Of a stretch of DNA of 15,194 nucleotides, positions 1,850 through 13,346 are shown piece by piece. The stretch is from Octopus sinensis (taxonomy: Eukaryota). Position numbers and translations under genes: made by a program. The notes beneath the pieces are model-generated. The model saw only the letters and a list, made by a program, of their open reading frames with translations. It had not been told where the DNA came from and made no database searches. The stretch spans positions 1 through 15,194 of the forward strand of contig NW_021825538.1 of the NCBI RefSeq assembly GCF_006345805.1, in the 5' to 3' direction. Each line of letters begins with the position of its first letter. The first letter of the stretch is position 1.

Positions 1850-1901
1850 TTATCATTATTATTAATTACTATTATTATTATTAATTACTATTACTATTAT
1901 T
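1850..1901. repeat. (ATT)n microsatellite
   Basis: Direct observation; lies immediately 5' of SINE copy A. Confidence 0.9.
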
Positions 1902-1902
1902 T

Positions 1903-2131
1903 GGGTGGTGAGCTGGCAGAATCGTTAGCATGCTGGGCAAAATGCTAGGCAGCTATTTGTTTGCCTTTACGTTCTGAGTTCAAATTTTGCCGACATCAAC
2001 CTTGTTCCTTTCGGGGTCAATAAAATAAGTACCCTTTGAGTTCTGGGGTCGATGCAATCAATTTACCTGCTCTCCAGAACTTTCTGGGCTTCTGTTAAAA
2101 TTTAAAGCCATTATTATTATTATTATTATTA
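1903..2131 (+). mobile_element. tRNA-derived SINE copy A with (ATT)n tail
   Basis: A-box-like gagctggcagaatcgttag, B-box-like gagttcaaatt (1976-1986), and core cctttcggggtcaataaaataagtacc shared with copies B-D. Confidence 0.8.
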
Positions 2132-2350
2132 CGACTCATCTGCCACTACATTCTGAGTTCAAATTCAACCAAGGTCAACTATGGCTTTCATTCTTTTGGG
2201 GTCAATTCAATAAGTTCCAGCTATGCACTGGAGGCGATGTAATTTACTAGTCCCCTCACCCCAAATTTCAGGCCTTGTGCCCATAGTAAGAAAGTATTCT
2301 TCTCCTTATTCTTATTCTTATTCTTATTATTATTATCATTATTATTATCG

Positions 2351-2386
<36 letters not shown>

Positions 2387-2393
2387 TTATAAT
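2132..2393 (+). mobile_element. 5'-truncated SINE copy B with (ATT)n-type tail
   Basis: ttctgagttcaaattcaaccaaggtcaact...ggggtcaattcaataagttccag...aaatttcaggccttgtgcc. Confidence 0.75.
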
Positions 2394-2395
2394 TA

Positions 2396-2606
2396 CTGTG
2401 ACGAGCTGGCAGAATTGTGAGGATGCAAAGCAAAATGTTGAGCGGCATTTTGTCCATCTTTACATTCTGAGTTCAAATTCCACCAAGGTTGACTTAGCCT
2501 CTCATCCTTATGGGATCGATAAATTAAGTACTAGTTGAGTACTGGGGTCAGTGTAATAGACTGGCCCCTTCCTTGAACTTGCTGGCCTTGTGCCAAAACT
2601 TGAAAT
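2396..2606 (+). mobile_element. tRNA-derived SINE copy C
   Basis: gagctggcagaattg...ttctgagttcaaattccaccaaggttgacttagcctctcatccttatgggatcgataaattaagtact. Confidence 0.8.
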
Positions 2607-2645
2607 CATTTTTATTATATTAAAAAAAAACATAAAAGAAATCAT

Positions 2646-2756
2646 TGCTGTTGTTGTTGTTGTTTTTGCTGCTGCTGCTAATATTATTATTATTGATGTT
2701 GTTATTGTTATAGTTATTGATATTCTTCTTCTTATTATTATTATTATTATTATTAA
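2646..2756. repeat. Compound (GTT)n/(GCT)n/(ATT)n/(CTT)n microsatellite
   Basis: Direct observation; lies between SINE copies C and D. Confidence 0.9.
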
Positions 2757-2757
2757 T

Positions 2758-2980
2758 GTGATGAACAAGCAGAATTGTTACAAAATGCCAGACAAAATAC
2801 TTTGCATCATTTCTTCCAAGTTTACATTTTGAGTTCAAATTCCACCAAGGTTGATTTTGCCCCTCGTCCTTTTGGGATTGATAAAATAAGAACCAGTTAG
2901 GGGCTGGGGGTGACATAATCAATTAACCCCCCACACCCAAAATTTCAGGCCTTATGGCTATAGTAGAAAGAATTATTATT
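2758..2980 (+). mobile_element. tRNA-derived SINE copy D with short (ATT)n tail
   Basis: gcagaattgtt...gagttcaaattccaccaaggttgattttgcc...gataaaataagaaccag...aaatttcaggccttat. Confidence 0.8.
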
Positions 2981-5185: not shown

Positions 5186-6371
5186 ATACATACATACAGA
5201 CGTATGGATGTATAAATATACATATGTGCATCCTTGTGTATATATTATACACATTCATTCTATCATATATACATATATATGTATGTGTATCCTGAAGAAG
5301 GTCTCTTTTATTTTTCATTCCTCCTGGGGTCAATAGAGTAACAGTCATTATTTCATAGACCAAGGAGGGGTGGAGGATCATTCTGATGATGATGGGTCAC
5401 CAGAATGTCATTAAACACCCCCACCAATATTTCCTAATCCACCTCATTAAATCCCTAATACTTCATAATAAACTACACCAAGTTATAACTCCTCACCTAA
5501 CACAAAACAAAACACACTTCACCTGCCAAACCCCTTTTTCATACAAACACATCTTTCTCATTGCTACCCAAACATTGTCCCTTATATTAAAGATAATTAA
5601 GATGAACCTACCTTTCATTAATTGGGCTTATTCATTAACCAATCTTTATGATCTCAATCAGCAACAAATAATAACGATCCTCTCAACATGCTGTCTATCA
5701 GTGTGATTATATGAAAGCCCATCTTTGGATAAGCTTTCCGAGTTAATCAATGTTGTGTATGATAATTGTGTGGATTATATTGAAATGTCGAGAGATTTAC
5801 AGCATTTGTCAGGTTAAGAACAGTTTCATCTCCAGCTTTATTCGTATCTGTTAATCCAGGTAAATATGATGGAAACCAAGCCAACCATGACTGTCCCATC
5901 ATTAGTAATACTTGTACCTGACAAATGTCTATGAAACATAATAAAGTCTATGTTTTGCTAATTGTTCCATGTTAACGAAGTTTGAACATGATTGCTGTGT
6001 GTTGGGACATAATATAGCATGTACACCAATTAAAGTTAATTTTCTCTACAGCTTAGAGTGTCTCGTTATTGAGTGCTTTTGGAGCAGGGGAATCTCTTTG
6101 ACTAATTATCGTTAAATAAATCTAAACCACACATGACTATTTCTTTGTGATGTTGAGAGCAAATATCATTTCCAGTGAAAATAATTATTTCTAATATTTA
6201 GACTCCATGTAATTAATGAAACTTAATACATCTTAGAATAGATTGTAATAAGTTGTTTAAATATTAATTAGACAAGATTAATTCACTGACAGAAATACAT
6301 AAATGTTTTGTTGGTGTTTTTCAAATGATGAAGCAAACATCATCTCCCTGAAACTTTAATATTTTCACAAA

Positions 6372-6401
6372 GCTAAATGTTTTCCTTATATTTCTTTGCA
6401 G
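6372..6401 (+). promoter_or_regulatory. 3' splice acceptor (branch point-like GCTAAAT, pyrimidine tract, TTGCAG) preceding the large coding exon
   Basis: gctaaatgttttccttatatttctttgcag|attcactATG; the AG is at 6400-6401. Confidence 0.7.
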
Positions 6402-6408
6402 ATTCACT

Positions 6409-7485
6409 ATGGAAGACCAGACTGAAAATACCCAGAAAAGAGCTTTAAGGGACTCAACACCAAAATGGGATGAAGGAAGAGTTGACAATAAAAGGTGTAA
6501 ATATGAGGAATATGATGGTTCAAGGAGAAGTGAAGAAAATACCCAGAAAAGAGCTTTAAGGGACTCGACACCAAAATGGAATGAAGAAGTTGACAATAAA
6601 ACGTGTAAATATGAGGAAGATGATGGTTCAAGGAGAAGTGATGAAGGATATTGTAGTGTTAGTTCAGAGAGAGAATCAGCAGTGAAGGCCATATCTGTGG
6701 CAAGACTCAACACACATGGAGACAAAGAAAGCACAAAAGAAACTGAAAAACAAATAGTTGCTAAAATACAGAGGATTCATCTTCAATATGATCGCTGCAT
6801 GATGTTTATGGAGCATATAGTTAAGGAGAGCAAACATTATGAAAGTCTGGGGTTAAGTGCCAATTGTATTTTAGAAAAGGTCAAAGAGAGACTTGGAATT
6901 TTGCTGAAATATACTAAAGAACAGAATATTTCTATTGAGCAGGACCTCGAATGGTTTCAACAAAGACTCTTTGACATTTATGTCACCTGTAACCCATACA
7001 ACCACAAGACCATTGAACCAGCAAAAGTAACCACGAAATTTCGGCCGCTTCAGCCAGTTGTGACCAGAGAAGTAAATATTGAGGAATCTGGAGAAGAATT
7101 TGAAGAAATCCCAATAATATCCAATATTGTCATCATAGAGGAGGGAGTAATGACATATTCCCACCTTTGTAAGACAATAAGTTTAGTAACAAGAGACAGT
7201 GACAGAATTGATGTCCATTGTCCATCTTCTGTGACCAGTTTCACCAGAATCAGTGAAGACATGGTTCTGGCAACCCTCCCCTTCCATGAAATGATTCTTA
7301 TTATCAGCCCCAAAACCTTCAAGATCAAAAGGATACAGTTGGGGTTACATATGGTGAGTTACTTGGAAGATTCTACACTTATAGGTGTAGAAATGTTTGG
7401 TAAGATAGTTTACCAATTTGATTGGGAGGATAATACCATTAACTATCAATTTATTACCAAAGAAACCCCTACAGATATTGTGTAG
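6409..7485 (+). CDS. First ORF fragment (358 aa): repeats, coiled-coil-like region and start of propeller module 1
   Basis: ATG lies 7 nt after a splice acceptor. The helical segment runs ESAVKAIS...WFQQRLFDIY, and beta-rich sequence starts at PIISNIV (7111). It continues in frame +3 as VGVQNILVITFASINRVICYKLDGQQLW. Confidence 0.75.
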   Translation: MEDQTENTQKRALRDSTPKWDEGRVDNKRCKYEEYDGSRRSEENTQKRALRDSTPKWNEEVDNKTCKYEEDDGSRRSDEGYCSVSSERESAVKAISVARLNTHGDKESTKETEKQIVAKIQRIHLQYDRCMMFMEHIVKESKHYESLGLSANCILEKVKERLGILLKYTKEQNISIEQDLEWFQQRLFDIYVTCNPYNHKTIEPAKVTTKFRPLQPVVTREVNIEESGEEFEEIPIISNIVIIEEGVMTYSHLCKTISLVTRDSDRIDVHCPSSVTSFTRISEDMVLATLPFHEMILIISPKTFKIKRIQLGLHMVSYLEDSTLIGVEMFGKIVYQFDWEDNTINYQFITKETPTDIV

Positions 7486-10400
7486 GGGTCCAGAATATAC
7501 TTGTAATTACATTCGCCAGCATCAACAGAGTAATCTGTTACAAACTGGATGGCCAACAGTTATGGGAGGTAGAGACCCATTCTCTGCACCTCCCAAGTAA
7601 AATCTCTCTCTACCAAAATTATTTCTATGTCCTCCAGGGACAAATAATTTATAGGATTTCAGCTAAAGGTGGTGTGACAAGGAGGGACATTGGCAGGAAA
7701 TGCCGCTCTATTTCTGTTGGTAAAGATACCATTTTGGTAACAGATTATTGCGGCAAACACATGGTATTCAAATGAATAAAGACTTTTGGCCCAACCTGTC
7801 ATACAATCACCAGCTACATACCCCCAGTTTAAAAGACTATATTGATATTGAGGATTGCTACAACATTACAAATATTCTACCTATGTCTGTATCTTCTATA
7901 TTAATAATTACAAAAACAAGAAAGCTAATTATTCACTGATAACGGGGAAATAATTAACCAAAATAATTCAGTTTTCCTTGAGCTTCCTTCTTTCTGTTGT
8001 AGAATAAATGCAAACAGGTTCCTGGTATTTTATTGTGAAATGAAAGGGTTTCAGTATATCACCTGTCCTGAACTAAGAAAAGGCCCTTTAATAAAGGTGC
8101 AAACTGGTTACATGAAAATATGTCATGTTGTATCAAATAAGTGTCTAGCTGTGACCACCACTGAAAACAAAAGCGAGGTCCATATCCTCTTGATCAACGA
8201 AGATAAAGTTGACATTGCAGAAAGAATTTCTCTGGGACATCATAATGTCAGCATTGCTGCAACTCCAATTAATTTTGTAGTCGTAGATGGAACGAAACGA
8301 AAAAAATGGTATTTTATTCCACATGTGGTGAAGAACTTTTTCAAAAATACCTTCCATTCTATGGCTACCCTCATCACATCTACTCTGATAATGTTTATTT
8401 CTATGTCCTCTTCAGGAGACACTCTATTCTCAGATGTTACGATCTATATGGAGAAATGAAATGGCAGTGGGAACTGCCTTTCCCTGTTCACCCTCACATT
8501 GCTGTTTTCCAAGGAACTCTTTATGTCCCGGACACTCAACTCAACAGGGTTCTTCTTTACAAGTATCAAGACCGGTCGTCTGGCGGTCTTTTACCCATTA
8601 AAAATCCTTACATCAGAAATCTAAATCTACGACTCAAAGAAAAGGAGAATGACCAAAAACTTGTAATTGGCGAAATATGTAATCTGTCCAATGGACAGTT
8701 GGTGGTTTCTGACATCAACCATGATTGCTTGTTGTATATTTCTGAGGAAGGAGACATTGTGTCCAGATTATCTCTGCCGTCTACAGCCACAAATATATGT
8801 CGATGGGATTCTAATCATATAGGGGTCACATTACCCCTACAGAAACAATTAAGGGTCATCGGAAACCTATCAAAGAGAGTGAGAAGTGTATCATTAAGGC
8901 AGCCTTATGTACAGGTGTGTAAGATGGGTGAATGTGAAATTGTTTGTTATTGTGATAAACCATCACATTTAGACATTTTAGCCATCAATTATTATAATCA
9001 AGTTGAAGTAATTAAGACAATTAATATCCCTGTGTTTGTAAAATCATTATCAATAGACAAGAAAAACAGAAAAGCTATTATTGTTACTAGGGGAAAAGCT
9101 TTTCAGTACAACACTAGAATAGGTGGTGGTGGTCGTGGAGGTCGTCAGATGGTCCCCAGTGTTTTAATGTCTCAAGTGAAACGTCCCCTCAGTCTCCAAG
9201 GTGGATCTATTGACCAAACGTCTTTTTTATCTGATAGACAGAAGCCGTATGTTTGCCATAAACGATCAGAATTTGTTGGTTAATGATCTCGTTACTAATA
9301 ATCAACTTATTATTATATCGACCTGGTGGATGTATTTTCCAGACACATTTCTCTCAGTGAAATGTTGTCTTCCACTTTATATCTACAGGACCTGACAGTT
9401 TCTGATAAAGCCAGACGTATTCCTCTCCCTAAACATTTGGGAGACAAAGAACCAGCGAGGATTAAACGTTTGGTTCTTACTGAAAATAATCTGATTGCAG
9501 GATGTGACAAAAAGAATGGAAACATTAAGATATTCACATTGGATGGTCACCTTATGGATTCAATCAAAGTGAATCTTTATTATTATATTAAAATGTGTCG
9601 ATGGCAGTCAAACACACTGGTCATTACGACTGGGGATCGTTATGATTATAATAAACACCAACTGTTGACATTAAAAGTGGAATTTCCATTGTCGTTGGTA
9701 ATTTACAAAACGAGAAATAAATATCAATGTGTGGCTTCTTTATCAAACAATCAACTGGTTTTGAGTGAATGGAGAGATGTAAGACATTTGCATTTTGTTG
9801 ATATTGATGAAATACATTCGAGTGTGAAGGAAATAAAAAAAATAGACATACCTGAACCATTAATAGAGAGATACGAATATGGAGGTTATTCTGATGAAAT
9901 CCAGGATATTAAAGTTACTGATGAAGATGTCATCATTGTCTTCAACTTCAGATTCATCATTTTCTTCAACAGTGGTGGTCAATATTTACATTCAGTCAGA
10001 CACTACATGGAGTATTATGTTGGTGATGATGACAGGTTGACAATTGATGACAGTTTTTTGTACATTCATGGTCCGTGGGAGAAATGTTTTGGTTCAACTG
10101 GATATCAAAACATTTTGTGTTTGACCCAGAATGGGGAATACAAGAGAATATTTTTAAATGAAAGGATTTATAAAGATGAAGTAGAATTCTCCAGTATAGA
10201 CTGTAAAGGACCAAGGTTTGTTGGAAGCCCCAGGTGGGGAGAAAGGAATGAATTGTATGTTGAAGGGTTGTTTATGGTGAATCGAGACAGCTTCCCGGTT
10301 GCTCGTTTACAAACAGACGACTGTCCTGTGCAAGTAAAAGATTTTGATGTCTCTGAGGAAGGAAAGACAGTTGTGTGTGAAAAAGCCAATAATGGAAATG

Positions 10401-11966
10401 TTAAAATATTCGATGAAGACGGCCAGTTGCTACGTCACAGAAATGTTGCAAGTTTAGTTGGTGGTGTGTTGTTTTACACAAGAATCACACATAATGGCCA
10501 CGGTTCCTAAAAGGAAAGAAATATTTCAACTGAATGGAGAAGATTTGCAGACATCTCAAGTTTGGTCGAGTCTCATCCCTTATGGTGTAATATGGAGAAA
10601 AGTGGCGGGTATTTACTGGTGTGTACATAATGAATTGATTGAATGTCATTGCATAAAGATTGATGGGGACCAAGTGAACATTCTGGAATCTGTGTCGTTA
10701 TTAAATCTTGATTCTGGTCTTCGTTTCCCTTCCATTACATCTGAAACGAACAAGGAAATATTCAGTAATGAATTAATTAATAAATCGGAATACAGAGGAG
10801 GAGATGGAGATGGAGGAGGAAGAAGAAGAGGTAAATCAGGTGAAATAATTGGTAAAGGTAGATTAAAGGTGAGATGTGGTAATTACATAGCAGAGATTAA
10901 TAATTCAGGAATTGATGAAATATCAGTGAGGAGACTTCCATATAGGACAGCAATGGTCCCTTTTTCCATTCCTGCATTTGAGGAACCTGTTCATTATGAT
11001 TTTAGGGACATTAGGGACCGGAACAGTAAACTAATTAAGTTAGATGAGAATGTGAGTGTGTTGATGTTTCGAGAAAGTGTCACATTAATCAGAACAACAA
11101 ACAACAAAACAGTGGACATACTTCAACATGAACAACAACAACGAACACCACTGGACATATGTCGGTGGACAGAGGAATGTTTCATTGTCGCCTTTGGGAG
11201 AGAAATGAGGGTCTTCAACAGGGATCTCCGTCGTTTAAAAACCATCAGAACTGAGAAATACTACAACAGGATTTATAAATACAACGACAATCAACTCGTG
11301 TGTGGTGGTCACGATATTAGAGACATAACTCAAGAAGAGAGAGACAAGAAATACCAAAGAAGATGGATAAACAACAAGGATTACTATTATTGCGATGACC
11401 GCGACATCTTTGACCCTTATTATGTGGATGTGGTTGATATCAAAGATGGGAAATGTAAAGATGAAGTGTGTGGTGGGAAGATGAGGAGATGGGAAAGGTT
11501 TGAGGGAGATGAAGGGGTGGATTGTGTGGGAGTCACATCTTTTGGTGATGTTGTTGTTGTGAGGTGGGAGATGAAGAAGAAGAAGGGGTCTGGAGATTGG
11601 GAAGTTTTTTGTTTTGTGGAATGGTTCAGGGAAAAGTCTTTGGTGAGGAGGATAAGAATAGAAGGAGGAAGGTTTTATGGTCGGGAATATTATATTGCAA
11701 GACCTCGTCTGACCATAATTGGTGAATGTGTTTATATAACAGAGATCATGAACAATATTTACGAAATACCTCGACATATTGAAGAGGAAACATCTGAAGA
11801 TTATGAGATCCTGGGATTAAAAGATAATCCAAAATATTTACTCCTCAGACGGGATGATAATGAAGTCTTTGCAGTTCTTGGTTTGGATGTTTCAGACAAT
11901 TCTTTGATGGTTTTTGGAATTATTCCTGGACGTCAATCTTTTGCTTTCTTTTATTTTGACAAATAA
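6409..11966 (+). CDS. Reconstructed single-exon ~1852-aa protein: charged N-terminal repeats, helical/coiled-coil segment, six tandem NHL/TolB-like beta-propeller modules; interrupted by 7 single-base frameshifts
   Basis: Protein-like sequence continues across frame changes without an in-frame stop. Segments: 6409-7482 (+1), 7482-7766 (+3), 7766-7927 (+2), 7929-8306 (+3), 8306-9199 (+2), 9201-9305 (+3), 9305-10468 (+2), 10470-11966 (+3). A recurring blade motif (FTRISEDMVLATLP, CCRINANRFLVFY, ICRWDSNHIGVTLP, MCRWQSNTLVITT, VCFTQESHIMATVP, ICRWTEECFIVAF) occurs every ~230-290 aa. The fold call is pattern recognition, not an HMM hit. Confidence 0.8.
6424..6642 (+). repeat. In-frame tandem duplication (111 nt + 108 nt; 37 and 36 aa)
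   Basis: ENTQKRALRDSTPKWDEGRVDNKRCKYEEYDGSRRSE / ENTQKRALRDSTPKWNEEVDNKTCKYEEDDGSRRSD; the units start at 6424 and 6535. Confidence 0.95.
7482..8306 (+). CDS. Middle fragments largely missed by the ORF track (end of module 1, first half of module 2)
   Basis: Hand translation. Frame +3: VGVQNILVITF...DTILVTDYCGKHMV. Frame +2: IQMNKDFWPNL...IITKTRKL. Frame +3: LFTDNGEII...VVVDGTKRKK. Confidence 0.7.
8306..9305 (+). CDS. Fragment covering the end of module 2 and most of module 3
   Basis: ORF 8306..9283 is protein-like up to KRPLSLQ (9199). It then continues in frame +3 as VDLLTKRLFYLIDRSRMFAIN, a typical blade-like P-x-x-L-x-V-D...RLFY pattern. Confidence 0.75.
9305..10468 (+). CDS. Fragment covering the end of module 3, module 4 and start of module 5
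   Basis: ORF 9326..10510 extends upstream to 9305 (TYYYIDLVDVF). It contains NHL-like strings IAGCDKKNGNIKIFTLDG and VVCEKANNGNVKIFDEDGQLL. Confidence 0.78.
10470..11966 (+). CDS. C-terminal fragment: modules 5 and 6, ending at TAA 11964-11966
   Basis: ORF 10458..11966 (502 aa). Removing one T at 10469 gives SLVGGVCFTQESHIMATVPKRKEIF across the junction. Confidence 0.78.
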   Translation, partial: CFTQESHIMATVPKRKEIFQLNGEDLQTSQVWSSLIPYGVIWRKVAGIYWCVHNELIECHCIKIDGDQVNILESVSLLNLDSGLRFPSITSETNKEIFSNELINKSEYRGGDGDGGGRRRGKSGEIIGKGRLKVRCGNYIAEINNSGIDEISVRRLPYRTAMVPFSIPAFEEPVHYDFRDIRDRNSKLIKLDENVSVLMFRESVTLIRTTNNKTVDILQHEQQQRTPLDICRWTEECFIVAFGREMRVFNRDLRRLKTIRTEKYYNRIYKYNDNQLVCGGHDIRDITQEERDKKYQRRWINNKDYYYCDDRDIFDPYYVDVVDIKDGKCKDEVCGGKMRRWERFEGDEGVDCVGVTSFGDVVVVRWEMKKKKGSGDWEVFCFVEWFREKSLVRRIRIEGGRFYGREYYIARPRLTIIGECVYITEIMNNIYEIPRHIEEETSEDYEILGLKDNPKYLLLRRDDNEVFAVLGLDVSDNSLMVFGIIPGRQSFAFFYFDK

Positions 11967-11967: not shown

Positions 11968-12024
11968 TATTTCCAGAAATATTAAACTTCAATCAATCTT
12001 CTCTTCTATTGTTGTTGTTGTAAA

Positions 12025-12047
12025 TGGCTTCGCCCGGGAATCGAACC
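12025..12047 (-). pseudogene. tRNA-like 3' fragment or SINE-head remnant with a Pol III B box
   Basis: The minus strand reads GGTTCGATTCCCGGGCGAAGCCA, followed by a (CAA)n tail (12008-12021). No matching 5' acceptor strand was found. Confidence 0.35.
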
Positions 12048-12104
12048 TGCATCGCATACATTGCATTCTACACACTTATTGTCGTACATTCCTCAACACT
12101 CTCT

Positions 12105-12220
12105 CTTTGTGTGTGTGTGTATATTTATATACAGTATATATACATGCGTTATATATATATACACACATATTTAGGAATGTATGTATAGAAATAAGGCTAT
12201 AAGTATGTATGTTTGTTGTG

Positions 12221-12267
<47 letters not shown>

Positions 12268-12292
12268 ATATATATACGCATGCATGTATGTA
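12105..12292. repeat. (TG)/(TA)n microsatellite region
   Basis: Direct observation. Confidence 0.9.
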
Positions 12293-12352
12293 TAGGAATG
12301 TCTGGTCCGAAAGCAGAGACTTTCATAATCATTGATTCTCCATTAAAAGGCA

Positions 12353-13187
12353 GACGACACCGCCGCCGTCTCCGCCGTCGTCGTGGTCGTGGTCGTCGTG
12401 GTCGTGGTCGTCGTGGTCGTGGTCGTCGTGGTCGTCGTCTCCGCCGTCGTCGCGTCGTCGTCGCCCGCCGTCGTCGTCGTGCGTGGTCGTCGTGGTCGTG
12501 GGCGCGTCGTCTCCGCCGTCGTCGTCGTGGTCGTCGTCGTCTCCGCGTCGTGGTCGTCGTCATCATCATCATCATCGTCGTCATCATCATCATCATCGTC
12601 GTCGTCATCGTCGTCATCATCATCATCGTCATCACCATCATCGCCATCATCATCGTCATCATCATCATCATCGTCGTCATCATCACCATCATCATCGTCA
12701 TCATCATCATCGTCATCACCATCATCGTCATCATCGCCATCATCATCGTCATCGTCATCATCATCATCTCGTCTCATCATCATCGTCATCATCGCCATCA
12801 TATCGTCATCACCATCATCGTCATCATCGCCATCATCATCGTCATCATCATCATCATCATCGTCATCACCATCATCGTCATCATCGCATCATCAATCTGC
12901 ATCATCATCATCATCGTCGTCATCATCACCATCATCATCGTCATCATCATCATCGTCATCACCATCATCGTCATCATCGCATCAATCGTCTCATCATCAT
13001 CATCGTCGTCATCATCACCAATCATCGCATCATCATCGTCATCATCATCATCGTCGTCGTCATCATCACCATCATCATCATCATCGCATCATCATTATCA
13101 TCATCGTCATCACCATCATCATCGTCGTCATCATCACCATCATCGCCATCATCATCGTCATCATCATCATCATCGTCGTCGTCATCA
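12353..13187. repeat. ~835 bp compound trinucleotide array (CGC/CGT/GGT, then CAT/CGT)
   Basis: Direct observation; accounts for the poly-S/H/I/D/M/R ORFs on both strands. Confidence 0.97.
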
Positions 13188-13346
13188 GCGTTGTGTGTGC
13201 GTGTGTGCAGTCTGCTCTGATAGTTTTTAACGTTTAATAAGAATAGATTGTTGTTGTTGTTGTTGTTGCAGTGACATTCCAACTGCACACACGCACAAAC
13301 ATTGCCTTTCGTCCTCGTAGGGTGTTGTTTGTTGTTTTTTGGGGTT

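What the first reader, a model, noticed from the sequence alone, without database searches (positions are those of the whole stretch)
6409..11966. Hidden ~1852-aa protein with six tandem beta-propeller-like modules behind a coiled coil
Seen: the joined frame has a periodic blade motif at nt 7243, 7998, 8798, 9596, 10470 and 11160, spaced ~252, 267, 266, 291 and 230 aa apart. Each is followed by a second shared blade (LHMVSYLEDSTLIGV, GYMKICHVVSNKCLAV, PYVQVCKMGECEIVCY, KYQCVASLSNNQLVLS, PYGVIWRKVAGIYWCV, YYNRIYKYNDNQLVCG). Known: TRIM-NHL proteins (Brat, LIN-41/TRIM71, TRIM2/3) pair a coiled coil with one six-bladed propeller, and molluscs have many such genes. Inference: this is a lineage-specific multi-propeller derivative in which six highly diverged modules form a multivalent ligand or RNA recognition array, possibly for innate immunity or post-transcriptional control. 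I do not know a characterised protein with this layout. Automatic annotation would split it into several small 'uncharacterised' genes.
Basis: partly seen in the sequence, partly recalled or inferred. Interest (0 to 1): 0.78.

Follow-up and report, generated by a model that had tools for sequence, protein, structure and literature searches.

The report
Broken octopus six-propeller gene copy
The window holds a frameshift-damaged copy of an octopus-only gene family whose ~1,800-residue proteins string six NHL-type beta-propellers behind a helical region; no member has been characterised, and one face of the fourth propeller varies strongly between recent copies.

Summary
Window 6409-11966 (+) reads as one 1,848-aa protein once 8 small frameshifting indels are bridged. 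Intact relatives of 1,660-1,910 aa exist in Octopus vulgaris, O. sinensis, O. bimaculoides and Argonauta hians. All are annotated only as "uncharacterized", have no Pfam domain, and no paper was found.

The layout is a charged, disordered N-terminus, about 110 aa of helices, then six modules of 230-330 aa. AlphaFold2 gives about 24 strands (six four-stranded blades) for modules 1, 2, 4 and 6. Profile comparison links modules 1, 3, 4 and, more weakly, 5 and 6, in register, to NHL domains of mollusc RING/B-box/NHL proteins. There is no RING or B-box, so this is not a TRIM protein. A coiled coil was not demonstrated.

Among recent paralogues, dN/dS is about 2 in propeller 4, 1-1.6 in propeller 6 and 0.3-0.6 elsewhere. 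In propeller 4 every second inter-strand loop, meaning one face, is hypervariable. This fits a recognition array with one variable binding face, but the ligand and the function are not known.

All eight frameshifts are unique to the window, and there are no premature stop substitutions. I cannot tell a young pseudogene from uncorrected assembly errors.

The parts
6380..6401 (+). Polypyrimidine tract plus AG splice acceptor, 7 nt upstream of the ATG. The coding sequence lies in one exon.
   Evidence: The sequence reads ttttccttatatttctttgcag|ATTCACTATGG. In L001 the gene model has a short 5' exon about 11.5 kb upstream and one 5.6-kb coding exon. P0003 is a single 5,406-nt exon.
6409..11966 (+). 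Whole coding region of the six-propeller family member. It gives 1,848 aa after 8 frameshifts are bridged. The stop is at 11964-11966.
   Evidence: It is 89% aa and 95.7% nt identical to O. vulgaris P0002/L001 over its full length.
6409..6657 (+). Charged N-terminal region predicted to be disordered. It contains a 108-nt (36-aa) tandem duplication at 6424-6645.
   Evidence: pLDDT is below 30 for residues 1-87. Tandem Repeats Finder reports period 108, 2 copies, 92% matches. There is no signal peptide or TM segment.
6658..6990 (+). Helical region with four predicted helices, about 110 aa. A coiled coil was not demonstrated.
   Evidence: AlphaFold2 helices at 85-102, 107-147, 152-172 and 181-195, pLDDT 56-77. 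The heptad test is not significant, p about 0.06. There is no profile match to the region between B-box and NHL of TRIM-like proteins.
7111..7792 (+). Propeller module 1 (M1).
   Evidence: About 24 strands, pLDDT 73-89. hhalign to the Mytilus NHL protein P0063 gives 90% probability over 149 columns. dN/dS is 0.30.
7835..8563 (+). Propeller module 2 (M2).
   Evidence: About 23-24 strands, pLDDT 54-87 by ten-residue block. Sequence links to the other modules are weak. dN/dS is 0.5-0.6.
8636..9430 (+). Propeller module 3 (M3), the most conserved module.
   Evidence: hhalign to NHL proteins P0062 (95.5%) and P0060 (91.5%). M3-M6 match at 88% probability. AlphaFold2 confidence is low.
9413..10264 (+). 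Propeller module 4 (M4), the hypervariable module.
   Evidence: 24 strands, including an N-terminal strand placed to close blade 6; pLDDT about 45-90 by ten-residue block, mostly 70-90. hhalign to the Sepia pharaonis RING-B-box-NHL protein P0061 gives 95% over 212 columns. dN/dS is 2.0-2.3. Alternate loops are hypervariable, p=7e-8.
10265..10976 (+). Module 5 (M5). It is short and conserved, carries a Gly/Arg-rich insert, and its propeller status is tentative.
   Evidence: pLDDT is below 50. hhalign gives M4-M5 66% and M5-P0061 69.5% over 137 columns. dN/dS is 0.5-0.8.
10980..11963 (+). Propeller module 6 (M6). It has insertions and variable patches in its C-terminal blades.
   Evidence: About 25 strands; pLDDT mostly 60-91, with two low-confidence inserts below 50. 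M3-M6 88% and M4-M6 70%. dN/dS is 1.0-1.6.
7481..7481 (+). Frameshift 1: 1-nt deletion relative to paralogues.
7758..7758 (+). Frameshift 2: 1-nt deletion (CC to C).
7908..7927 (+). Frameshifts 3 and 4: two 1-nt deletions 19 nt apart (TTT to TT, AAA to AA).
8298..8299 (+). Frameshift 5: 2-nt insertion within a complex change next to an A-run.
9222..9309 (+). Frameshifts 6 and 7: +1 at 9222 and -1 at 9309. The 29 codons between them are read in another frame.
10469..10469 (+). Frameshift 8: 1-nt insertion.

Best explanation
Shown: the window is octopus genomic DNA. It carries one copy of an octopod-specific multigene family with a single coding exon. The encoded protein has no signal peptide or TM segment, so it is probably intracellular. 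It consists of a charged disordered N-terminus, a helical region of about 110 aa, and six tandem beta-propeller modules. The modules descend from the NHL-type six-bladed propeller found in mollusc RING/B-box/NHL proteins, but the protein has neither a RING nor a B-box.

Shown: the family has old, well conserved members on other chromosomes and a recently expanded set of paralogues spread along one small chromosome. The window copy belongs to the expanded set.

Shown: among these recent copies, amino-acid change concentrates in propeller 4 and, less so, propeller 6. In propeller 4 it falls on every second inter-strand loop, which means one face of the disc.

Inferred mechanism: propellers 1-3 and 5 are a conserved scaffold or partner-binding part. 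Propeller 4, and perhaps 6, presents a rapidly diversifying ligand-binding face. NHL domains of Brat and LIN-41 are known to bind RNA on one face of the propeller (established knowledge); I could not tell here whether the variable face is the same one. The family would therefore act as a repertoire of intracellular recognition proteins whose target evolves fast, whether pathogen-derived, selfish-element-derived or RNA.

The copy in the window cannot make this protein as written, because 8 private frameshifts break it. Either it is a very young pseudogene or the assembly has uncorrected indel errors. The evidence does not separate the two.

The confidence figure applies to the whole statement. 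Identity and architecture stand at about 0.9; the recognition mechanism at about 0.35-0.4.
For: Family and intact relatives:
- Searches give 37 Octopus-only hits of mostly ~1,100-2,100 aa (two fused models are longer).
- One search finds only 33 clusters among 1.84 billion representatives.
- Searches show all strong hits are Octopus spp. or Argonauta hians.

Single exon and duplicated flanks.

Architecture:
- AlphaFold2 gives helices at 85-195 and about 24 strands for each of M1, M2, M4 and M6, mostly at pLDDT 60-91.
- Foldseek top hits are tandem-propeller proteins, E 1e-20 to 1e-12.

NHL ancestry:
- The weak but library-significant hits (E 7e-6 to 2e-4) are proteins with RING, B-box and/or NHL Pfam domains.
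- hhalign gives M4-P0061 95%, M3-P0062 95.5%, M3-P0060 91.5% and M1-P0063 90%, with in-register multiple hits.
- The only PDB sequence hit, not significant, is the TRIM71 NHL domain.
- There is a sub-threshold Pfam NHL match in family member P0043.

Old conserved subfamilies: 92-99% identity between species.

Selection pattern:
- dN/dS is 2.0-2.3 in M4, against 0.3-0.6 in N, M1, M2 and (in two of three comparisons) M3, and 0.5-0.8 in M5, across three pairwise comparisons.
- In M4, alternate loops have entropy 0.98 against 0.15 bits, Mann-Whitney p=7e-8. M1 and M2 show no alternation.

No TM or signal peptide.

Lesions.
Against: - No Pfam family passes threshold on the window protein or on P0002.
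- M3 and M5 were modelled with pLDDT below 50, and M2 has only weak sequence links to the other modules. 'Six propellers' therefore rests on combined, uneven evidence.
- I could not inspect coordinates, so ring closure and which face carries the variable loops are inferred from strand order alone.
- Positive selection is suggestive only: 5 synonymous against 44 non-synonymous changes in the variable loops, omega about 2, p=0.087, from three sequences.
- There are no expression data, no ligand and no literature.
- The conserved single-copy subfamilies suggest that at least part of the family has a housekeeping role rather than a recognition role.
Confidence: 0.65

Rival explanations
1. The window gene is intact in the animal. 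The eight 1-2-nt frameshifts are uncorrected consensus errors of a long-read assembly, in a paralogue-rich region where short-read polishing works badly.
For: - All 8 frameshifts are private to the window.
- None of the 105 window-specific substitutions creates a stop. About 4.6 would be expected if the whole branch were neutral, and about 2.3 for the time needed to collect 8-10 indels at the flank rate.
- Omega on the window branch (0.68) is no higher than on the intact paralogue's branch (0.89).
- Several indels sit in short homopolymers: TTT to TT, AAA to AA, and a T-run at 9222.
Against: - Only about half of the indels are in runs of 3 nt or more.
- One is a 2-nt insertion within a complex change, and one deletes a non-repeated C.
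- Broken copies also occur in an independent chromosome-level O. vulgaris assembly: L002 has 2 frameshifts.
- Many family models are truncated, as expected in a birth-and-death family.
Confidence: 0.45
2. The window copy is a young pseudogene in a birth-and-death gene cluster. The frameshifts are real and recent.
For: - There are eight frameshifts of mixed type: five -1, two +1 and one +2, several outside homopolymers.
- Another paralogue (L002) is also broken and annotated as two genes.
- No protein model from this locus is on record.
- Finding zero stops has a probability of about 0.1 under a short neutral phase, so it is not excluded.
Against: - There is no nonsense substitution, no rise in omega and no extra branch length: 106 window-specific substitutions against 107 for L001.
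- The module-specific pattern of constraint is fully retained.
Confidence: 0.5
3. The family is a structural scaffold or adaptor of a conserved cellular machine, like the multi-propeller proteins DDB1, IFT-A subunits or UTP proteins, and not a variable recognition repertoire. The variability of propeller 4 would reflect relaxed constraint in redundant copies.
For: - Foldseek top hits are such scaffolds.
- Two subfamilies are single-copy-like and 92-99% conserved between Octopus species.
- The excess of non-synonymous change is not statistically secure.
Against: - Relaxation would not confine change to every second loop of one propeller while the alternate loops and the neighbouring modules stay constrained at omega 0.3-0.6.
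- The Foldseek matches have TM of about 0.15-0.25 and about 10% identity, which is generic propeller similarity.
- Sequence homology points to NHL, not WD40.
Confidence: 0.25
4. The region encodes several independent short genes, or the frame changes mark short introns, rather than one long protein.
For: A mechanical ORF list shows five or six separate ORFs of 139-502 aa.
Against: - The window is collinear, base for base, with uninterrupted 5.4-5.6-kb single-exon ORFs in paralogues, and the differences are 1-2-nt indels.
- There is no spacer, start codon or splice-size insertion between the modules.
- Homologues in four species keep the same end-to-end layout.
Confidence: 0.02
5. The ORF is carried by a transposable element, which would explain the many dispersed copies.
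For: - There are dozens of copies spread over 7-23 Mb of one chromosome and on other scaffolds.
- Two gene models are fused to zinc-finger or DUF4371 (transposase-derived) domains.
Against: - The ORF has no transposase, reverse-transcriptase or integrase domain.
- Duplicated segments extend well beyond the ORF, with ragged ends.
- No terminal repeats flank the ORF.
- Conserved orthologues sit on other chromosomes.
Confidence: 0.04

Closest known systems
TRIM-NHL proteins (Brat, LIN-41/TRIM71, TRIM2/3) and the expanded mollusc RING/B-box/NHL proteins (e.g. Sepia pharaonis CAE1315789.1 = P0061)
   Same: Each module is homologous at profile level to a whole NHL six-bladed propeller: M4 against P0061 gives 95% probability over 212 columns. 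The modules follow a helical segment. The protein is probably intracellular.
   Different: There is no RING and no B-box. There are six propellers instead of one. The Pfam NHL model does not reach threshold. The helical region shows no detectable similarity to TRIM coiled coils.
Multi-propeller scaffolds (DDB1 with three propellers; IFT-A subunits and UTP21/WDR36 with tandem WD40 propellers)
   Same: Several beta-propellers lie on one chain. These are the top Foldseek matches, E 1e-20 to 1e-12.
   Different: The similarity is at fold level only: about 10% identity and TM of about 0.15-0.25. Those are WD40-type, seven-bladed propellers in conserved eukaryotic machines. This family is NHL-derived, about six-bladed, octopod-specific and has many copies.
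Rapidly evolving TRIM restriction-factor clusters (primate TRIM5/22, fish finTRIM), as an analogy from established knowledge
   Same: Both form tandem or segmental paralogue clusters with broken copies. In both, non-synonymous change concentrates in surface loops of the C-terminal recognition domain.
   Different: The recognition domain there is B30.2/SPRY and the effector is a RING E3 ligase. Here the variable unit is one face of an NHL-type propeller and no effector domain is recognisable. An antiviral role is not tested.
Six-bladed propeller families of the same broad kind (DUF4934, Mala_s_1-like, SGL/SMP-30)
   Same: Sub-threshold Pfam matches to these six-bladed propeller families occur in family members and in the distant NHL hits.
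   Different: All matches are below the curated cut-offs. They give no evidence of enzymatic residues or of membership.

Membership tests
NHL-repeat beta-propeller superfamily (Pfam PF01436 and relatives) | A match to the NHL repeat profile at or above the curated threshold | tested here: not met
   There is no Pfam hit for the window ORFs or for P0002, P0025, P0031 or P0035. The best result in the family is P0043 at 18.5 bits against a cut-off of 20.
NHL-repeat beta-propeller superfamily (Pfam PF01436 and relatives) | Significant profile-level homology to bona fide NHL domains across most of a propeller | tested here: met
   A profile of M1-M4 hits RING/B-box/NHL proteins at E 7e-6 to 2e-4 in a library of 1.84 billion. 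hhalign gives 90-95.5% probability for M1, M3 and M4, 69.5% for M5, and a weak match for M6.
NHL-repeat beta-propeller superfamily (Pfam PF01436 and relatives) | Six blades of four antiparallel strands forming a closed ring | tested here: inconclusive
   DSSP on the AlphaFold2 models gives about 24 strands for M1, M2, M4 and M6. M3 and M5 have low confidence.
TRIM / tripartite-motif proteins (TRIM-NHL subgroup) | An N-terminal RING finger | tested here: not met
   No RING family is found in the window protein or in P0002, P0025, P0035, P0038, P0040 or P0043.
TRIM / tripartite-motif proteins (TRIM-NHL subgroup) | One or two B-box zinc fingers | tested here: not met
   No B-box family is found in those same proteins. 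The distant hits P0060, P0061 and P0064 do have them.
TRIM / tripartite-motif proteins (TRIM-NHL subgroup) | A coiled-coil region before the C-terminal domain | tested here: inconclusive
   Four helices are predicted at aa 85-195 with pLDDT 56-77. Heptad contrast is not significant, p about 0.06. There is no profile match to the corresponding TRIM region.
WD40 tandem-propeller scaffolds | WD40 repeat signature / homology | tested here: not met
   There is only fold-level Foldseek similarity. No WD40 Pfam hit reaches threshold.
Pseudogene | Disabling mutations that are real in the genome, and loss of constraint | tested here: inconclusive
   There are eight private frameshifts. However, there are 0 stop gains and window-branch omega is 0.68 against 0.89 for the intact paralogue. 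Read-level support cannot be tested with these tools.

The most novel reading that the evidence does not exclude
Octopods have evolved a new class of intracellular recognition proteins. They took the NHL propeller of a TRIM-like ancestor, multiplied it six-fold on one chain, dropped the RING and B-box, and then expanded the gene into dozens of paralogues. In these, one face of propeller 4 (and part of propeller 6) is under diversifying selection. This would be a germline-encoded variable receptor repertoire against viruses, transposons or other fast-evolving targets, in animals whose immune receptors are poorly known.
Probability: 0.2. Interest if true: 0.8.

Novelty: new variant of a known kind. 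Interest (0 to 1): 0.55.

Why it matters
Cephalopod genomes are known for a few large lineage-specific expansions. Much of their 'uncharacterized' gene content has no structural or functional reading.

This work gives one such family a concrete architecture: six NHL-derived propellers behind a helical region. It also gives it an origin in TRIM-like NHL proteins and a taxonomic range of Octopus plus Argonauta, with nothing detected in decapodiform cephalopods or other molluscs.

It further yields a testable functional hypothesis: a hypervariable binding face on propeller 4. If that pattern holds up under proper site models, the family becomes a candidate variable recognition system in an invertebrate with no adaptive immunity.

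For annotation, the case shows that frameshifted copies of this family get split into several short genes or are missed altogether.

Tried and rejected
- Pfam on the window ORFs and on four family members gave nothing above threshold.
- Rfam on the whole window gave no match. ARAGORN found no tRNA.
- A PDB sequence search with the M1-M4 profile gave only TRIM71 NHL at E=1.7, which is not significant.
- Foldseek with the two multi-module models returned only generic tandem-propeller matches with low TM.
- A second word-indexed homologue search, using a diverse family alignment, returned the same Octopus proteins and no new taxa in its 40 listed rows.
- An exact look-up of the first window ORF found no record, so the source assembly could not be identified.
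- Four literature searches, including six LOC identifiers of family members, found nothing relevant.
- A crude heptad test for a coiled coil was not significant.
- Loop alternation in M6 was unclear, p=0.19. This may be because extra strands shift the parity.
- I considered and rejected four other readings. Introns do not fit because the differences are 1-2-nt indels in a collinear alignment. Separate short genes and a transposon-borne ORF are treated under rival explanations. RNA editing cannot restore a reading frame.


Full report
**1. What is in the window**

The window is AT-rich eukaryotic DNA with many microsatellites. Between 6409 and 11966 the + strand has long open segments that hop between the three frames. 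Joining them at eight points gives a 1,848-aa protein with no internal stop.

**2. What it is related to**

The joined protein hits 37 proteins, all from Octopus vulgaris, O. sinensis or O. bimaculoides. All are named 'uncharacterized' or 'hypothetical', and most are 1,100-2,100 aa long. The best is P0002 (1,903 aa), 89% identical over the whole length.

An exhaustive HMM search with a profile of modules 1-4 against 1.84 billion representatives found only 33 clusters. The strong ones are Octopus spp. plus two Argonauta hians proteins of 1,913 and 1,925 aa. The family therefore looks octopod-specific.

A distance tree shows several old subfamilies. Two of them behave like conserved single-copy orthologues: P0038/P0067/P0068 at 92-99% identity, and P0043/P0071 at 94%. 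There is also a recently expanded clade, and the window groups with P0002 inside it.

At least two dozen O. vulgaris models lie on one 29-Mb chromosome record (OX597841.1), at positions from 7.08 to 22.7 Mb. The coding sequence is a single exon: P0003 is 5,406 nt uninterrupted. P0002 has one short 5' exon about 11.5 kb upstream and then the 5.6-kb coding exon. The window has the matching acceptor just before the ATG. Flanking DNA is duplicated together with the gene.

**3. The lesions**

Against L001, the P0002 locus, the coding region is 95.7% identical. It shows 8 frameshifting indels (five -1, two +1, one +2) and 5 in-frame indels. A three-way alignment with a second O. vulgaris copy (L002) shows that all eight are private to the window.

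The window-specific branch has 29 synonymous and 76 non-synonymous changes, giving omega 0.68. It has no stop gain and is no longer than the branch of the intact paralogue, 106 against 107 substitutions.

About 4.3% of random substitutions in this CDS would create a stop. A fully neutral branch would therefore predict about 4.6 stops. A neutral phase just long enough for 8-10 indels, at the flank ratio of 5.2 substitutions per indel, predicts about 2.3.

Indels are 3.6 times rarer relative to substitutions in the CDS than in the flanks. The gene was therefore constrained for most of its history.

The indel contexts are mixed. Some sit in short homopolymers, one is a complex 2-nt change, and one removes a unique C. 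L002, in an independent chromosome-level assembly, also carries two frameshifts and is annotated as two genes of 1,228 and 275 aa.

I cannot decide between a very young pseudogene and residual assembly errors. Reads would settle it.

**4. Architecture**

AlphaFold2 on P0002, run in two overlapping parts with 24-sequence family alignments, gives the following:

| Region (part: residue numbers) | Prediction | pLDDT |
|---|---|---|
| Part A 1-87 | disordered | below 50 |
| Part A 85-195 | four helices | 56-77 |
| M1 (part A 236-463) | all-beta, about 24 strands | 73-89 |
| M2 (part A 478-720) | all-beta, about 23-24 strands | 54-87 |
| M3 | low confidence | below 50 |
| M4 (part B 50-333) | 24 strands | 45-90, mostly 70-90 |
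| M5 | low confidence | below 50 |
| M6 (part B 570-916) | about 25 strands | mostly 60-91; two inserts below 50 |

Twenty-four strands in 230-290 aa is what a six-bladed, four-stranded propeller needs.

Foldseek against the PDB returns tandem-propeller proteins first: IFT-A, UTP proteins and DDB1, at E 1e-20 to 1e-12. TM-scores are low, as expected when several domains are compared at once.

I could not inspect coordinates, so ring closure is inferred and not seen.

**5. Are the modules repeats of one another, and of what?**

Profile-against-profile comparison of the six modules gives in-register matches: M3-M6 88%, M4-M6 70%, M4-M5 66%, and weaker ones for the other pairs. The N-terminal control region gives none.

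The weak but library-significant hits of the family profile (E 7e-6 to 2e-4) are mollusc proteins with RING, B-box and NHL Pfam domains. They include:
- a 656-aa Sepia pharaonis protein with RING + B-box + NHL;
- a Potamilus protein with RING + B-box;
- a Mytilus protein with a sub-threshold NHL match and other weak beta-propeller matches.

hhalign places whole NHL domains on single modules:
- M4-P0061, 95% over 212 columns;
- M3-P0062, 95.5%;
- M3-P0060, 91.5%;
- M1-P0063, 90%;
- M5-P0061, 69.5%.

The P0061 NHL domain also finds M4, M3, M5 and M6 in register when suboptimal alignments are listed.

The modules are therefore diverged NHL-type propellers, one propeller per module. The family has no RING or B-box, so it is not a TRIM protein. 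The helical region shows no significant heptad pattern or similarity to TRIM coiled coils, so 'coiled coil' remains a guess. There is no signal peptide or TM segment.

**6. How it evolves, and what that suggests**

I compared three recent paralogues: the window, L001 and L002. dN/dS by region is as follows:

| Region | dN/dS |
|---|---|
| N-terminus, M1, M2 | 0.3-0.6 |
| M3 | 0.6 in two comparisons, 2.0 in the third (2 synonymous changes only) |
| M5 | 0.5-0.8 |
| M6 | 1.0-1.6 |
| M4 | 2.0-2.3 in all three comparisons |

I then took 14 close paralogues and mapped variability onto the predicted strands of M4. All 12 loops of one parity are variable (mean entropy 0.98 bits, up to 9 different residues per site). 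All 11 loops of the other parity are nearly invariant (0.15 bits). The Mann-Whitney p is 7e-8.

Successive loops of a propeller alternate between its two faces, so the variable residues lie on one face. M1 and M2 show no such alternation.

In the variable loops the three-sequence count is 5 synonymous against 44 non-synonymous changes, omega about 2, p=0.087. This is suggestive and not conclusive.

From established knowledge, the NHL domains of Brat and LIN-41 bind RNA on one face of the disc. I could not tell whether the variable face of M4 is the same one.

My best reading has three parts:
- Propellers 1-3 and 5 form a conserved body.
- One face of propeller 4, and perhaps parts of 6, forms a rapidly diversifying ligand-binding surface.
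- The family would then be an intracellular recognition repertoire.

The nature of the ligand and any immune or post-transcriptional role are inference only.

**7. Comparison with what is known, and novelty**

Closest by descent are the mollusc RING/B-box/NHL proteins and TRIM-NHL proteins. Closest by layout are multi-propeller scaffolds such as DDB1 or tandem-WD40 proteins. Closest by evolutionary behaviour are the rapidly evolving TRIM clusters.

None of these has six NHL-type propellers on one chain without RING and B-box. No family member is characterised, and there is no Pfam model or paper that I could find. I rate it a new variant of a known kind.

**8. Verdict**

The structural interpretation is largely right, while the 'coiled coil' and 'TRIM' aspects are not supported. 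The copy in this window is broken, for a reason that remains undecided. Interest is moderate at 0.55.

Noticed in passing
window 6424-6645: A 108-nt (36-aa) tandem duplication, 2 copies at 92% identity, lies inside the charged N-terminal coding region. It is also present in P0002. Some other subfamilies appear to have one copy (e.g. P0014).
   Followed up: partly
window 5289-6390: The 1.1 kb just upstream of the ATG (intron or promoter-proximal DNA) is 98.7% identical to the paralogous locus L001. This is clearly more conserved than the coding region (95.7%) or the other flanks (86-96%). It could reflect gene conversion or a conserved regulatory segment.
   Followed up: partly
window 12343-13244: About 0.9 kb of (CGT)n/(TCA)n trinucleotide repeat lies downstream of the gene. 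It produces long spurious ORFs on both strands (e.g. 12181-13230 +, 12171-12767 -).
   Followed up: no
window 1850-2980 (copies at 2147-2268, 2461-2582, 2823-2944): A repeat unit of about 314-362 nt is present in three diverged tandem copies. It also matches several places in the paralogous loci L001 and L003. It may be a dispersed short repeat element of the octopus genome.
   Followed up: no
window 12020-12075: Just after the stop codon there is a segment (GGCTTCGCCCGGGAATCGAACCTGCATCGC) that looks like the reverse complement of a tRNA T-arm/acceptor, possibly a SINE fragment. ARAGORN calls no tRNA there.
   Followed up: partly
L002 13651-14630 (O. vulgaris OX597841.1, about 7.09 Mb): Another paralogue in the chromosome-level O. 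vulgaris assembly has two frameshifts and is annotated as two adjacent genes (1,228 aa and 275 aa). Broken or mis-assembled copies are therefore not peculiar to this window.
   Followed up: partly
proteins P0004, P0010, P0001 (O. vulgaris models): Some gene models of the family are fused to C2H2 zinc fingers (P0004) or to DUF4371, a transposase-derived domain (P0010). P0001 contains two family copies in one 2,526-aa model. These are probably annotation fusions with neighbouring genes.
   Followed up: no
proteins P0007, P0009, P0012 (joined aa ~389 to 549): Several O. vulgaris models share the same internal gap, lacking most of M1's end and M2's start. This is either a real deletion variant that spread by duplication or a recurrent gene-model artefact.
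   Followed up: no
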